The notes beneath the pieces were generated by a model. It had not been told where the DNA came from and searched no databases. It saw only the letters and a program-made list of their open reading frames with translations. A program made the position numbers and the translations under genes. Source: Octopus sinensis (Eukaryota). Taken from it: a stretch of DNA of 64,000 nt. Below are positions 32,070-41,007 of this stretch, piece by piece. The stretch is taken from assembly GCF_006345805.1 (NCBI RefSeq), contig NW_021835471.1:1-64000 (forward strand), read 5' to 3'. How positions within the stretch are numbered: position 1 is the first letter of the stretch; the number at the start of each line of letters is the position of its first letter.

Positions 32070-33575
32070 GGTTTAATGGGCGCAGATTTGACGTCAGGCA
32101 CAGTAATTCATAATAATTAATGATAATAATTAATAATAATAATAATAATAATAATAATAATAATTAATAATAATAATAATAATAATAATAATTCATAATA
32201 ATTAATGATAATAATAATAATAATAATAATAATAATAATAATAATTCATAATAATTAATGATAATAATAATAATAATAATAATAATTCATAATAATTAAT
32301 GATAATATTAATAATAATAATATAATAATAATAATAATTAATAATAATAATAATAATAATAATAATAATTCATAATAATTAATGATAATAATAATAATAA
32401 TAATAATAATAATAATAATTCATAATAATTATGATAATAATAATAATAATAATAATAATAATAATAAATAATAATTCATAATAATTAATGATAATAATAA
32501 TAATAATAATAATAATTCATAATAATTAATGATAATAATAATAATAATAAATAATAATAATAATAATTCATAATAATTATGATAATAATTAATAATAATA
32601 ATAATAATAATAATAATAATTAATAATAATAATAATAATAATAATAATAATAATAATAATTCATAATAATTAATGATAATAATAATAATAATAATAATAA
32701 TAATAATAATAATAATAATAATTCATAATAATTAATGATAATAATAATAATAATAATAATAATAATAATAATTCATAATAATTAATGATAATAATAATAA
32801 TAATAATAATAATAATAATAATAATTCATAATAATTAATGATAATAATAATAATAATAATAATAATTCATAATAATTAATGATAATAATAATAATATAAT
32901 ATATAATATAATAATAATAATAATAATAATAATAATAATTCATAATAATTCATGATAATAATAATAATAATAATAAAATAATTCATAATATTAATGATAA
33001 TAATTAATAATAATAATAATGATAATAATAATAATAATAATAATAATAAATAATAATAATAATAATAATAATAATAATATTATTATTATTATTATTATTA
33101 TTATTATTATTATTATTATTATTATTATTATTATTATTAATGATAATAATAATAAAATAATAATAATAATAATAATAATAATAATAATTATTATTATTAT
33201 TATTATTATTATTATTATTATTATTATTATTATTATATTATTATTATTATTAATGATAATAATAATAATAATAATAATAATATAATATTAATGATAATAA
33301 TAATAATAATGATAAACCTTTCTGTTATAGGCACAAGGCCTGAAATTGGAGGGAGGGGGCACAGTCGATTATATCAAACACAGTACTCAACTGGTACTTA
33401 ATAACTGACCCCAGAAAGATGAACGGCAAAGTTGACCTCAGCGAAATTTGGAACTCAGAATAGTAGTTCAACAGAATTTGCAGAACATTTTGTTTAAAAA
33501 CGGCTGCAATTTTGAAGAAGACTTGAAAGTGTATACTCTCAGACAATGTTCAGAATCTGCTTCACTTTCTATACT
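32070..33575 (+). repeat. Local segmental duplication, copy A: 35-bp unique head + (AAT)n + SINE fragment + ~110-bp unique tail
   Basis: Matches 40071-41007 end to end with only scattered substitutions and a different (AAT)n length. Confidence 0.9.
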
Positions 33576-34588
33576 CAAAATGCACGAGGAGAAATAATTA
33601 ACAACATGCCCTGGAGGATTGAATAAAATAATAGGAGAATGTCATTAAATTTACACAAAACTATTTGGTTAAATATCATTTTCCTTTTACCTTTTCCTTT
33701 TTTCTTTCCTCTTTTTTACTCTCTATTTTACTGTCTTTTTCTTTTCACCAATTATAAAATTGGAACTTAAAGACTCATGCTGTCATTCCATCAACATATG
33801 GACACTGCTTGAGCTTGTTCATACTTTAGATATGAATTTCTATCACTTTTACTTTGAACTTGACAAAGAGAGGCTTGCTGTCGGAATATCATTCAACCAT
33901 TAAATATTATTAATATCATTATTATTATTATTATTAATTATATTATTATTATTATTATATTATTATTAATATTATATCATTATTATTGTTATATTATTAT
34001 TATTATTATCATTATCATTATTATCATCATCATTATTATTATCATCATTATCATCATTATTATCATTATCATTATTATTATTATTATTATTATTTATTAT
34101 ATTATTATTATTATTATTATCATTATCATTATTATTATTATTATTATCATTATCATTATTATTATTATTATTTATTATTATTATCATTATTATTATCATT
34201 ATCATTATTATTATTATTATTATTATTATTATCATTATCATTATTATTATTATTATTTATTATTATTATCATTATTATTATCATTATCATTATTATTATC
34301 ATTATCATTATCATTATTATTATCATTATTATTATCATCATCATCATCATTATTATTATATTATTATTATATTATTATTATTATTATTATTATTATTATT
34401 ATTATTATCATTATTATTATCATTATCATTATTATTATCATCATTATTATTATTATATATATTATTATTATCATTATTATTATTATTATCATCATTATCA
34501 TTATCATTATTATCATCATTATCATTATTATTATTATTATCATTATCGTTATTATTATTATTATTATTAGCAAAAGTAATTCACTTAC

Positions 34589-34837
34589 CTTTTATCTTTA
34601 AGGAATAATTTCCAGAGCAGAGATACAAGTCACAAAAATACCAAGTCAAATCTTGTTTGGTGACATTTCGGATCAAAAGCTTCGATGAGTTACCATTTTG
34701 TGTAACTTCATGGTTACTACGATTATAACAAGTCATATCACATTCATATCTTCCATAGTCATTTTTCCAGCCAACTATTCTTTTCATCCCGGCTACTTCA
34801 ATATGAAGTGTGACACTGCCCCCTAATGCAACTGGTC
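34589..34837 (-). CDS. Ig receptor domain 3 main exon (249 nt): GPVALGGSVTLHIEVAGMKRIVGWKNDYGRYECDMTCYNRSNHEVTQNGNSSKLLIRNVTKQDLTWYFCDLYLCSGNYSLKIK
   Basis: ctttttatttcag acceptor, G|gtaagt donor, phase 1-1. LLIRNVTKQDLTWYFC has the exact spacing of the Ig motif LxIxxVxxxDxxxYxC. Confidence 0.9.
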
Positions 34838-35904
34838 CTGAAATAAAAAGACAAATCAATATTATTGATTGGTTTTCCATATGAAAGATTTCATCATCAT
34901 TGCCATTTTAACACCTACTTTTCCTTGCTTGGGAGCAGAGTTTTCTTTGTATACGACTGGACACTCTTCCTGGCCTAATACTCTTTGTACTCTTTTACTT
35001 GTTTCAGTCATTTTGACTGCGGCCATGCTGGAGCACCGCCTTTAATCGAGCAACTCAACCCCGGGACTTATTCTTTTGTAAGCCCAGTACTTATTCTATC
35101 GGTCTCCTTTGCCAAACCGCTAAGTAACGGGACATAAACACACCAGCATCGGTTGTCAAGCAATGCTAGGGGGACAAACACAGACACACAAACACACACA
35201 TACATATATATATATATATACACATATATACGACAGGCTTCTTTCAGTTTCCGTCTACCAAATCCACTTACAAGGCTTTGGTCGGCCCGAGGCTATAGCA
35301 GAAGACACTTGCCCAAGATGCCACACAGTGGGACTAAACCCGGAACCATGAGGTTGGTTAGCAAGCTACTTACCACACAGCCACTCCTATGCCTACATAT
35401 ATATATATATATATAATATACGACAGGCTTCTTTCAGTTTCCATCTACCAAATCCACTCACAAGGCATTGGTTGCCCGGGGCTATAGCAGAAGACACTTG
35501 CCCAAGATGCCACGCAGTGGGACTGAACCCGGAACCATGAGGTTGGTTAGCAAGCTACTTACCACACAGCCACTTCTGCACCTAATATGTCAGTCTATTG
35601 AGTAACAAGGTGCCTAGACATGTTTTACCAAGTGAACTGGAAATAAAGGACACCATATAAATGGGCCTTTTGTTTACTAGGATTTTGCCAAGTAAGATAC
35701 AACCTCGTCACTGTAAACCAAGCTGAACAGAAAGGTGTCACATTAACAACTGGTGTAGCAGCATTGTAGTCAGATGTTACAAGTGTAAAGGAGATGCCTT
35801 CAACCCAGTGGAACAGGTCAAGAAAGTTACAGAGAGAGTTAAAGCCCAATTAATTAAAAACAGAATTAGATGGATCCTTAATAATTATCCAACTGATGCC
35901 AGCA

Positions 35905-36410
35905 TCATCATCATCATCATCATCATCATCATCGTTTAACGTCCGTTCTCCATGCTAGCATGGGTTGGACGGGTCGACGGGGATCTGGGAAGCCAGGAGG
36001 CTGCACCAGGCTCCAGTCTGATCAGGCAGTGTTTCTACAGCTGGATGCCCTTCCTAATGCCAACCACTCCGAGAGTGTAGTGGGTGCTTTTTACGTGCCA
36101 CCGGCACAGGTGCAAGGTGAGGCTGGCAATGGCCACGAATCAGATTGGTGCTTTTTACATGCCACCAGCACGGAAGCCAGTCAAGGCGGCGCTGGCATCG
36201 GCCACATTCGGATGGTACTTTTTACATGCCACCGGCACAAAAGCCAGTCAAGGCGGCGCTGGCATCGGCCACATTCGGATGGTACTTTTTACATGCCACC
36301 GGCACAAAAGCCAGTCAAGGCGGCGCTGGCATCGGCCACATTCGGATGGTACTTTTTACATGCCACCGGCACAAAAGCCAGTCAAGGCGGCGCTGGCATC
36401 GAGGCCATTA
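35905..36410 (-). mobile_element. RTE 3' UTR/tail copy with ~60-bp internal tandem repeats
   Basis: (CAT)n, cgtttaacgtccg and repeated ggcgctggcatcggccacattcggatgg. Confidence 0.8.
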
Positions 36411-39753: not shown

Positions 39754-39768
39754 AAATCATTTCCTTAC

Positions 39769-40017
39769 TGTGTATCTTCAAATCAAATTTTTCATAGTTG
39801 AGGTTGTCTTCTTCAAATTTCCAAGTCAATCGTTCCTTTGTTACGTTTCGGATCCAAAGAGTCGATATATCTCCCTTCTGCGTCACTCTGTATTCGGCGC
39901 TGTTAGCGCATGTCCGATCACATTCGTATTTATAATTGTTGTATTTCCAAACGGTCGGTCTTTTCATGTTTGGTATTTCAACCTGTAGAGTAGAGCTTAC
40001 ACTGAGGGCACCATTAT
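39769..40017 (-). CDS. Ig receptor domain 2 main exon (249 nt): DNGALSVSSTLQVEIPNMKRPTVWKYNNYKYECDRTCANSAEYRVTQKGDISTLWIRNVTKERLTWKFEEDNLNYEKFDLKIH
   Basis: ctttatttcag acceptor, A|gtaagg donor, phase 1-1. 42/83 residues identical to domain 1 by hand count; donor flank tataaatcatttccttac is shared with domain 1. Confidence 0.9.
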
Positions 40018-40070
40018 CTGAAATAAAGAAACCAGGTAAAATGTTTACTTTTCTACCACATGGATCCAGG

Positions 40071-41007
40071 TTTAATGGGCGCAGATTTGACGTCAGGCAC
40101 AGTAATTCATAATAATTAATGATAATAATAATAATAATAATAATAATAATAATAAAATAATAATAATAATATAAAATAATAATTCATAATAATAATGATA
40201 ATAATTAATGATAATAATTAATAATAATAATAATAATTCATAATAATTCATAATATTAATAATAATAATAAATAATAATAATAATAATATAATAATAATT
40301 CATATAATTAATGATAATAATAATATATAATAATAATAAATAATAATATAATAATAAATAATAATAATATAATAATAATAATAATAATAATAATAATTCA
40401 TAATAATAATGATAATAATAATACTAATAATTAATGATAATAATAATAATAATAATAATAATAATCATAATAATAATGATGATAATAATAATAATCCTAA
40501 TAATAATAATAATAATAATAATAATTCATAATAATTAATGATAATGATAATAATAATAATCATAATAATAATAATAATATTAATAAAATAATGATAATAA
40601 TAATAAAATAATAATAATAATAATAATAATAATAATAATAATAATAATAATAATAATAATAATTAATGATAATAATAATAATAATAATAATATAATATTA
40701 ATGATAATAATAATAATAATGATAAACCTTTCTGTTATAGGCACAAGGCCCGAAATTGGAGGGAGGGGGCACAGTCGATTATATCAACCACAGTACTCAA
40801 CTGGTACTTAATTAATTGACCCCAGAAGGATGAACGGCAAAGTTGACCTCAGCGAAATTTGGAACTCAGAATAGTAGTTCAACAGAATTTGCAGAACATT
40901 TTGTTTAAAAACGGCTGCAATTTTGAAGAAGACTTGAAAGTGTATATTCTCAGACAATGTTCTGAATCTGCTTCACTTTCTATACTCAAAATGCAAGAGG
41001 AGAAATA
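40071..41007 (+). repeat. Local segmental duplication, copy B
   Basis: ggtttaatgggcgcagatttgacgtcagg...gaggagaaata; begins ~55 nt from the domain-2 acceptor. Confidence 0.9.

What the first reader, a model, noticed from the sequence alone, without database searches (positions are those of the whole stretch)
33311..40872. One central arm, two alternative partners: competing pre-mRNA hairpins around Ig domains 2 and 3
Seen: a ~150-bp SINE-variant core occurs at 33311-33461 (+), 38507-38658 (-) and 40721-40872 (+), each attached to a long AAT/ATT tract in the register that extends the stem. The three share diagnostic substitutions, so they are local copies. The middle arm [38507-39753] can pair with 40105-40872 (a stem of several hundred bp whose ~350-nt loop holds the domain-2 exon and both its splice sites) or with 32110-33461 (loop holds micro-exon 3 and the domain-3 exon). 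The two folds are mutually exclusive. Known: competing docking/selector pairing controls alternative exon choice in arthropod Dscam. Since all exons are phase 1-1, either skip keeps frame. Regulation here is inference.
Basis: partly seen in the sequence, partly recalled or inferred. Interest (0 to 1): 0.72.

Follow-up and report, generated by a model that had tools for sequence, protein, structure and literature searches.

The report
Young inverted SINE/microsatellite repeats in octopus introns
Three copies of a SINE fragment with a kilobase AAT/ATT tail really do sit around two exons of an Octopus sinensis Ig-domain gene and could form huge RNA hairpins, but they are a recent local duplication of ordinary intronic repeat DNA, and nothing found here supports a Dscam-like splicing switch.

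Summary
The sequence observation is correct. Window 40068-41007 (R) and 32069-33596 (L) are direct segmental copies. Both are inverted copies of 38456-39753 (M), which is a SINE 3' core plus its (ATT)n tail.

The gene is Octopus sinensis LOC115231260, on the minus strand, with three Ig-like exons.

- **Origin.** M belongs to the old duplicated exon unit: each Ig exon is followed by gtaag, an (AAT)n tract and an antisense SINE, also in O. bimaculoides. R and L exist only in the O. sinensis / O. vulgaris copies. They are absent from the O. bimaculoides gene and from an 87% O. sinensis paralog that has the same exon structure.
- **Splicing evidence.** No annotated isoform skips Ig2 or Ig3. The arms show no compensatory changes, and their tract lengths vary about two-fold between copies.
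- **Folding.** There are five arms, not three, because the (AAU)n tracts after Ig1 and Ig3 also pair. The global minimum-energy fold is R·M plus T3·L (and T1·L); M·L is not used.
- **Background.** The window holds 89 other inverted repeat pairs.

The most likely reading is incidental intronic dsRNA, probably an ADAR substrate, with at most low-level loop-out skipping or circularisation of Ig2. That is a known kind of feature (inverted Alu-like pairs). Interest is low.

The parts
40068..41007 (-). Arm R. In transcript order it reads: 135-nt unique flank (41007-40873), sense SINE 3' core (40877-40719), (AUU)n tract (40725-40109), 41-nt unique flank (40108-40068). It ends 50 nt upstream of the Ig2 3' splice site.
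   Evidence: Direct copy of arm L, including both unique flanks (families D12-D14). The core is 96% identical to M in inverted orientation (I7, 8). Present in L001 and in O. vulgaris L003; absent in L002 and L004.
39769..40017 (-). Ig-like domain 2 exon, 249 nt, phase 1-1. 3' splice site uuucuuuauuucag|AU; 5' splice site CAG|GUAAGG.
   Evidence: Translation and 100% match to XP_029657181 (LOC115231260). It lies in the 333-nt loop of the R·M fold.
38456..39753 (+). Arm M. SINE head remnant 38456-38506, SINE 3' core 38507-38660, (ATT)n tail 38654-39753. In the pre-mRNA this reads as (AAU)n starting 16 nt after the Ig2 5' splice site, followed by the antisense SINE.
   Evidence: A positional ortholog exists in O. 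bimaculoides (L004 14886-15095, 78-81% identity, tract about 40 nt). The old paralogous unit after Ig1 is at 46387-47310.
32069..33596 (-). Arm L. In transcript order: 135-nt flank (33596-33462), sense SINE core (33466-33309), (AUU)n tract (33315-32110) with internal AAU/AUU switches, 41-nt flank (32109-32069). It lies in the Ig3-to-TM intron.
   Evidence: Internal self-complementarity: pair I23 and a self-fold energy of -242 kcal/mol.
33905..34569 (-). Arm T3: (AAU)n tract starting about 20 nt after the Ig3 5' splice site. It is the proximal partner of L, about 590 nt away.
   Evidence: ddG for T3+L is -526 kcal/mol. There are 650 T3·L pairs in the global fold.
34589..34837 (-). Ig-like domain 3 exon, 249 nt.
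37526..37564 (-). 39-nt micro-exon between Ig2 and Ig3 (peptide STRTEIYKITQN).
   Evidence: A paralogous micro-exon region lies at 45888-46055.
46387..47310 (+). Arm T1: degenerate variant SINE core (46387-46476) plus an (ATT)n tract running up to the Ig1 exon. It is the old paralog of arm M.
   Evidence: ddG for T1+R is -399 and for T1+L is -395 kcal/mol. There are 381 T1·L pairs in the fold.
47317..47565 (-). Ig-like domain 1 exon, 249 nt.

Best explanation
The feature is a by-product of repeat dynamics in an intron-rich octopus gene, not a dedicated splicing device.

**History (shown).**
- An old SINE inserted antisense, with its (ATT)n tail pointing at the 5' splice site of an Ig exon. It became part of the unit that was triplicated to give Ig1, Ig2 and Ig3.
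- After the split from O. bimaculoides (about 34 My) and before the O. sinensis / O. vulgaris split (about 2.5 My), the tails expanded to 0.6-1.2 kb.
- In the same interval, an M-type block (5'-truncated core plus tract) was copied in inverted orientation. That copy, together with 41 and 135 bp of flanking sequence, was then duplicated to a second intron, giving R and L.

**Consequence (inferred).**
- In the pre-mRNA, R pairs co-transcriptionally with M across the 333-nt loop that holds Ig2. L pairs with the neighbouring (AAU)n tract after Ig3.
- These long duplexes, A/U-rich but with a 172-nt mixed-sequence core, are most likely bound, hyper-edited and unwound by ADAR and helicases. This is the usual fate of the many other inverted-repeat duplexes in octopus transcripts.
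- Splicing of the strong-site exons then proceeds constitutively. Any Ig2 skipping or back-splicing would be a low-level side effect.
For: - **Gene identity and isoforms.** The window gene is O. sinensis LOC115231260, with no exon-skipping isoform among the cluster members.
- **Ancient unit.** Exon, gtaag, (AAT)n and antisense SINE occur together after all three Ig exons in O. bimaculoides, and in the Ig1/Ig2 paralogous units of the window.
- **Distribution of R and L.** They are present in the window, in L001 and in O. vulgaris L003. They are absent from O. bimaculoides L004 (no assembly gap in its Ig1-Ig2 intron) and from paralog L002.
- **Dating.** Core identities are M vs R/L 94-95%, O. 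sinensis vs O. vulgaris orthologous arms 96-99%, and M vs O. bimaculoides M 81%. Cores cluster by arm type, with no compensatory change. Species divergence times come from PMC10700109.
- **Tract homology.** The motif is shared only by the M, R and L tracts, and it is abundant in the M-type tract of paralog L002.
- **Length variation.** The M tract is about 1100, 590 and 515 nt, and the L tract about 1220, 550 and 1350 nt, in the window, L001 and L003.
- **Folding.** Results are.
- **Background.** There are 89 inverted pairs in 64 kb, and comparable duplex energies for other pairs in the same transcript.
- **Literature.** Octopus has an exceptional load of long dsRNA and hyper-editing arising from neighbouring inverted repeats (PMC5625713).
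Against: - No RNA data were available, so constitutive splicing rests on Gnomon models and models lifted over from them. The O. vulgaris proteins are transfers of the O. sinensis models.
- The R·M helix is unusually close to the exon. It ends at the G of the 5' splice site GU and about 85 nt upstream of the 3' splice site, which could well perturb exon definition.
- Paralogous genes in the family do have annotated Ig-exon-skipping isoforms.
- Retention of both arms for more than 2.5 My fits neutrality but does not prove it.
- Kilobase-scale minimum-energy folds of low-complexity RNA, computed at 37 C and with intervening sequence removed, are only indicative.
Confidence: 0.7

Rival explanations
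1. Loop-out effect of a single hairpin. The R·M duplex measurably promotes skipping and/or back-splicing (a 249-nt circRNA) of the Ig2 exon in the O. sinensis / O. vulgaris lineage, as inverted Alu pairs do in primates. No competition or regulation is implied.
For: - Inverted copies of one repeat lie in both flanking introns, 50 nt and 16 nt from the exon.
- The predicted stem has about 760 pairs, closes on the 5' splice site, and leaves a 333-nt loop.
- Skipping keeps the reading frame.
- The mechanism is documented for inverted Alu pairs (PMC13019027, PMC13019944, PMC2533698). Competition between RNA pairs is documented for circRNA formation (PMC6965350, citing Zhang 2014).
Against: - No Ig2-less isoform is annotated.
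- Both Ig2 splice sites read as strong, whereas in primates weak 3' acceptors are the ones prone to loop-out (PMC13019027).
- ADAR editing and helicases are expected to melt such stems. This is inference from PMC5625713.
Confidence: 0.2
2. M chooses between R and L, and the mutually exclusive folds act as a regulated switch between Ig2 skipping and skipping of micro-exon 2 plus Ig3. This would be analogous to Dscam docking/selector competition.
For: - Pairwise energies are large for both alternatives: ddG is -708 kcal/mol for R+M and -903 for M+L.
- Both skips keep the reading frame.
- The arms are kept in O. vulgaris.
Against: - The global fold never uses M·L, because L has closer (AAU)n partners.
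- R is transcribed first and lies 350 nt from M, while L lies 5 kb further on, so kinetics favour R·M.
- The arms are absent in O. bimaculoides and in paralog L002, which have the same exons.
- There is no covariation.
- The exons are used together, not mutually exclusively.
- Many other inverted pairs compete in the same transcript.
Confidence: 0.05
3. The relevant effect is at the DNA level. The AT-rich quasi-palindrome (M-exon-R, about 0.8-kb arms with a 350-bp spacer) is an unstable, recombination-prone structure. It would drive tract length changes, duplications and gene conversion of the enclosed exon.
For: - Tract lengths differ about two-fold between near-identical copies.
- The Ig2 exon sits in the spacer, and in O. 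vulgaris it is a mosaic whose 3' half matches paralog L002. The flanking arms are meanwhile 98-99% identical to O. sinensis.
Against: The length differences could be assembly noise in microsatellites. The mosaic exon could reflect ancestral polymorphism. No breakpoint analysis was possible.
Confidence: 0.03
4. Assembly artefact: a fold-back chimeric long read creating a false inverted duplication.
For: The window comes from an unplaced PacBio-era contig, and inverted duplications are a known artefact class (own knowledge).
Against: - The arms are 86-96% identical, not 100%, and the exon is not duplicated.
- The same three arms occur in a second O. sinensis contig and in the independent chromosome-level O. 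vulgaris assembly.
Confidence: 0.02

Closest known systems
Inverted Alu (SINE) pairs flanking exons: loop-out exon skipping and circRNA biogenesis in primates (PMC2533698, PMC13019027, PMC13019944; alternative circularisation by competing pairs, Zhang 2014 as cited in PMC6965350)
   Same: - Oppositely oriented copies of one SINE lie in the two introns flanking an internal exon.
- The predicted long stem has the exon in its loop.
- The insertion or duplication is lineage-specific and young.
- Several alternative partners exist in the same pre-mRNA.
   Different: - The arms are not independent retrotranspositions. They are a local inverted copy plus a dispersed segmental copy of one old element.
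- Most of the stem is A/U-only microsatellite (AAU·AUU) of 0.6-1.2 kb, rather than a 300-nt Alu.
- No skipping or circRNA has been shown.
- The host is a cephalopod.
Arthropod Dscam1 docking site / selector sequence competition (PMC3535345, PMC4691838, PMC8791459)
   Same: One sequence is complementary to two others in the same pre-mRNA of an Ig-superfamily gene with tandemly duplicated Ig exons.
   Different: - Dscam elements are short, conserved and co-varying, with one selector per variant exon. Pairing activates one exon of a mutually exclusive cluster.
- Here the exons are all included together.
- The arms are young repeat DNA with no covariation.
- They are absent from a congener that diverged 34 My ago.
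- Pairing would loop exons out rather than select them.
ADAR hyper-editing substrates formed by neighbouring inverted repeats, exceptionally abundant in Octopus (PMC5625713)
   Same: Long, nearly perfect intramolecular dsRNA from inverted repeat copies in an intron. The 172-nt core is 95% complementary.
   Different: Editing was not examined. Most of the duplex is A/U microsatellite, whose editing would be hard to map.

Membership tests
Dscam-type docking/selector competing RNA structures | A cluster of mutually exclusive variant exons (only one included per mRNA) | tested here: not met
   All annotated products of LOC115231260, LOC115228031, LOC115227428 and the O. vulgaris gene contain Ig1, Ig2 and Ig3 together.
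Dscam-type docking/selector competing RNA structures | One docking site and one selector adjacent to each variant exon | tested here: not met
   M follows Ig2, R precedes Ig2 and L lies about 1 kb downstream of Ig3. There are three (AAU)n arms and two (AUU)n arms.
Dscam-type docking/selector competing RNA structures | Evolutionary conservation and covariation of the pairing elements | tested here: not met
   R and L are absent in O. bimaculoides and in paralog L002. Differences between O. sinensis and O. vulgaris are uncompensated.
Inverted-SINE-pair loop-out / circRNA architecture | Reverse-complementary copies of one repeat in the upstream and downstream introns of an exon | tested here: met
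   R and M flank Ig2. The core is 95% complementary over 172 nt, and 806 bp align at 88.6%.
Inverted-SINE-pair loop-out / circRNA architecture | Predicted stable stem-loop enclosing the exon | tested here: met
   The minimum free energy is -951 kcal/mol, with 762 R-M pairs and a 333-nt loop. R·M persists in the global folds.
Inverted-SINE-pair loop-out / circRNA architecture | The exon is actually skipped or back-spliced in transcripts | not testable with these tools
   No transcriptome data were available. The annotated isoforms show no skip, which is weak negative evidence.
Inverted-SINE-pair loop-out / circRNA architecture | Weak exon definition, especially a weak 3' acceptor (PMC13019027) | tested here: inconclusive
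   Read by eye only. The 3' splice site uuucuuuauuucag|A and the 5' splice site CAG|GUAAGG look strong. No scoring model was run.
ADAR hyper-editing dsRNA substrate | Long, near-perfect intramolecular duplex | tested here: met
   The core R / core M duplex energy is -302 kcal/mol, with 152 of 154 core positions paired.
ADAR hyper-editing dsRNA substrate | Clusters of A-to-G mismatches in RNA reads | not testable with these tools
   No RNA reads were available.
SINE (identity of the 'core') | Many dispersed copies in both orientations, about 200-250 bp, with a simple-repeat 3' tail | tested here: met
   There are 19 hits in 64 kb on both strands and an alignment of full-length copies. The variant copies carry the (ATT)n tail.
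SINE (identity of the 'core') | Pol III (tRNA-like) head | tested here: inconclusive
   ARAGORN and Rfam find nothing. A B-box-like GAGTTCAAATTCC is visible in the copies, recognised from own knowledge only.

The most novel reading that the evidence does not exclude
The five arms form a lineage-specific two-state network in the O. sinensis / O. vulgaris pre-mRNA. One state is R·M plus T3·L; the other is T1·R plus M·L. By summed pairwise energies they are near iso-energetic, about -1234 versus -1302 kcal/mol. ADAR, helicases or temperature would toggle between them, producing two-Ig isoforms that lack either Ig2 or micro-exon 2 plus Ig3. That would be a splicing switch built in under 34 My from a SINE tail microsatellite.
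Probability: 0.04. Interest if true: 0.7.

Novelty: new member of a known kind. Interest (0 to 1): 0.2.

Why it matters
- **If the arms affect splicing.** This would be a clean, datable non-primate example of inverted SINE copies creating loop-out skipping or a circRNA. Natural controls already exist: the O. bimaculoides ortholog and a paralog both lack the arms.
- **As it stands.** It mainly illustrates how SINE-tail microsatellites and local duplications generate the very long intronic dsRNA for which octopus transcriptomes are known.
- **A caution for scanning.** In this genome, exon-bracketing inverted repeats are the background, not a signal.

Tried and rejected
- **Locus look-ups that failed.** No record was found for P0023, P0003, P0011 and P0002. 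As a result, the paralogs with annotated Ig-exon skipping (LOC115225115/6) could not be checked for arms.
- **Origin of the R/L flanks.** The 135-nt and 41-nt unique flanks have no other homolog in the window or in L001-L004, even at word size 7. Which of R or L is the parent, and how the copy was made, stays open.
- **Target-site duplications.** Read by eye, L has ATTAAACAA versus ATTAACAAC, while R has only a weak match. This was judged inconclusive in AT-rich sequence.
- **RNA family searches.** ARAGORN and Rfam found nothing over the window.
- **Full fold of the 9-15 kb pre-mRNA.** This was too slow, so the intervening sequence was removed instead.
- **A second protein search for skip-junction peptides.** Not run. 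The first query held all exons, so any skip isoform in the database would already have been retrieved.
- **Assembly artefact.** Considered and rejected because the arms are present in the independent O. vulgaris assembly.

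
Full report
**1. What is there**

The region is A/T-rich repeat DNA inside a gene on the minus strand.

The translated exons match Octopus sinensis LOC115231260 isoforms X1-X3 at 100%. The protein is uncharacterised. It has a signal peptide, three paralogous Ig-like domains of 83 codons, two 13-codon micro-exons and a transmembrane (TM) exon.

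| Exon | Window coordinates | Length |
|---|---|---|
| Ig1 | 47317-47565 | 249 nt |
| micro-exon 1 | about 45925-45963 | 39 nt |
| Ig2 | 39769-40017 | 249 nt |
| micro-exon 2 | 37526-37564 | 39 nt |
| Ig3 | 34589-34837 | 249 nt |
| TM | about 29485-29694 | |

All the internal exons are multiples of three.

**2.

- A BLAST search with the middle core finds 19 family copies in the window. Only 33309-33466 and 40719-40877 are 94-96% identical to it and share its variant 3' end. The others are 77-85% identical and end earlier.
- Each core abuts a long trinucleotide tract on the side that continues the helix.
- The 21-mer TTCATAATAATTAATGATAAT occurs 13 times in L, 2 times in R and 2 times in M on the opposite strand. 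It occurs nowhere else in the window, and shuffled sequence gives 0. The tracts were therefore copied together with the cores.
- R (40068-41007) and L (32069-33596) also share unique flanks of 41 and 135 bp. That makes them a dispersed segmental duplication rather than two SINE insertions.
- M keeps 51 nt of SINE head (38456-38506) that R and L lack.

**3. Where the arms come from**

The Ig1 and Ig2 units are old tandem duplicates: 39474-40063 matches 47029-47611 at 79%, and 37487-37656 matches 45888-46055 at 75%.

In every unit the exon is followed by gtaag, an (AAT)n tract and an antisense SINE core. In O. bimaculoides this holds for all three Ig exons, with tracts of only 20-50 nt. So M is ancient and positionally orthologous across species.

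Related loci were fetched and mapped:

| Locus | Identity | R, M and L |
|---|---|---|
| Window | O. sinensis LOC115231260 | all three present |
| L001 | O. sinensis LOC115228031, 98% | all three present, same places |
| L003 | O. vulgaris chromosome OX597842.1 | all three present, same places |
| L004 | O. bimaculoides LOC106882146 | M only; no R or L (no gap in its 1.26-kb Ig1-Ig2 intron) |
| L002 | O. sinensis LOC115227428, 87% paralog | no R or L |

Core identities give the order of events:
- M versus R/L: 94-95%.
- O. sinensis versus O. vulgaris, same arm: 96-99%.
- M versus O. bimaculoides M: 81%.

With the published splits of 2.5 and 34 My (PMC10700109), R and L arose between those two dates. 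They arose as inverted copies of an M-type block. The M-type tract of L002 is full of the 21-mer in transcript sense.

Tract lengths differ about two-fold among the three copies.

**4. Pairing potential**

Two-strand folds gave these ddG values:

| Pair | ddG (kcal/mol) |
|---|---|
| R+M | -708 |
| M+L | -903 |
| T3+L | -526 |
| T3+R | -454 |
| T1+R | -399 |
| T1+L | -395 |

T1 and T3 are the (AAU)n tracts after Ig1 and Ig3. The system therefore has three (AAU)n arms and two (AUU)n arms, not one arm with two partners.

- **Contiguous R-exon-M fold.** The 2552-nt segment folds at -951 kcal/mol with 762 R-M pairs and the cores in register. The 333-nt loop is closed at 40102/39768, which is the G of the 5' splice site.
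- **Adding T3 to L.** The optimum becomes R·M (750 pairs) plus T3·L (650 pairs), with only 14 M·L pairs.
- **Adding T1 as well.** The result is R·M 750, T3·L 528, T1·L 381 and M·L 0.
- **Transcription order.** The order T1, R, exon 2, M, T3, L also favours R·M and T3·L. This is inference.

These folds are indicative only. They involve low-complexity RNA, 37 C parameters and removed intervening sequence.

**5. Is it special?**

- The window contains 89 inverted repeat pairs of at least 100 bp and at least 80% identity within 10 kb of each other. Every exon except TM is bracketed by at least one.
- R·M and M·L are the two longest pairs. Other pairs in the same pre-mRNA reach ddG of -330 to -494 kcal/mol and are more stable per nucleotide.
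- Octopus is reported to have an exceptionally high fraction of loci forming long dsRNA, and very high hyper-editing, mostly from neighbouring inverted repeats (PMC5625713).

**6. Evidence on regulation**

- None of the 10 full-size proteins in the 90% cluster lacks Ig2 or micro-exon 2 plus Ig3. Their isoforms differ only at the N- or C-terminus. This evidence is weak, because these are Gnomon models and the O. vulgaris entries are transferred from O. sinensis, with Iso-Seq curation according to PMC10700109.
- O. bimaculoides and L002 have the same exon set without the arms.
- Substitutions in the cores since the O. sinensis / O. vulgaris split (about 4 in M, 1 in R, 7 in L) are uncompensated. 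Their rate is no lower than in the flanking intron, which is 98-99% identical.
- The Ig2 splice sites read as strong.
- On the other side, paralogs of the family do have annotated isoforms lacking exactly one Ig exon (LOC115225116 X8 versus X2), or lacking a micro-exon. Cassette use of such exons is therefore plausible in principle.

**7. Comparison with known systems**

The architecture matches inverted Alu pairs that flank exons. These promote loop-out skipping and circRNA formation, including competition among alternative pairs (PMC2533698, PMC13019027, PMC13019944, PMC6965350).

It does not meet the defining features of Dscam docking/selector control: mutually exclusive exons, one selector per exon, and conservation with covariation (PMC3535345, PMC4691838, PMC8791459).

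**8. Verdict**

The feature is real and striking in size, but it is a young local duplication of SINE-tail repeat DNA. The most likely outcome is incidental intronic dsRNA that gets edited and unwound, with at most minor loop-out effects on Ig2. The regulated-competition reading is not excluded, but I put it at about 5%.

It is a new member of a known kind, and interest is low.

Noticed in passing
window 14044-28764: A 14.7-kb satellite of 139 copies of a 106-bp unit (96% matches, GC 26%, strong GC skew). It begins about 700 bp downstream of the gene's last coding exon.
   Followed up: partly
window 37694-38451: An imperfect ACC-rich minisatellite (15/18/33-bp periods, about 750 bp) directly abuts the SINE head of arm M. 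On the transcript strand it is a G-rich (GGU)n-like run. It is much shorter in O. vulgaris, where the alignment starts only at query position 168.
   Followed up: no
window 39769-40017 versus L003 19879-20130 and L002 24511-24762: The O. vulgaris Ig2 exon is a mosaic. Its 3' half carries the substitutions of the O. sinensis paralog LOC115227428, while the flanking arms are 98-99% identical to the window. This suggests gene conversion or ancestral polymorphism in the spacer of the R-M quasi-palindrome.
   Followed up: partly
L004 18863-19000 (O. bimaculoides): The RefSeq models XP_014788203 and XP_052833980 end by reading through the Ig3 5' splice site into the (AAT)n tract and the antisense SINE (C-terminus ...GKEITFANNNNNNSFQFWHKVSNF...). 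They lack the TM exon. This is probably an annotation artefact next to assembly gaps.
   Followed up: partly
proteins P0011/P0013, P0002/P0004/P0006, P0007: Paralogous O. sinensis genes have many predicted isoforms. LOC115225116 X8 lacks exactly one Ig exon relative to X2. LOC115225115 has at least 16 isoforms that use different Ig exons. LOC115230628 X2 lacks micro-exon 1. Their loci could not be fetched.
   Followed up: partly
window 41057-41776, 11280-11977, 47729-48203, 63283-63952; also 31000-31926, 36529-37397, 29757-30862: SINE-derived sequences occur as short tandem arrays of 181-184-bp units. Other 275-bp and 251-bp tandem arrays lie in the same introns.
   Followed up: no
L001 (VCDQ01005333.1) versus the window: A second O. 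sinensis contig carries a 98-99% identical copy of the whole gene, annotated as a separate locus (LOC115228031). Its M and L tracts are about half as long. It is probably a haplotig or a very recent duplicate.
   Followed up: partly
window 32060-32068 / 33597-33605: The L block is bounded by similar 9-mers (ATTAAACAA and ATTAACAAC) that could be a target-site duplication. The R block has only a weak equivalent. It is unclear whether the R/L block is mobile.
   Followed up: partly
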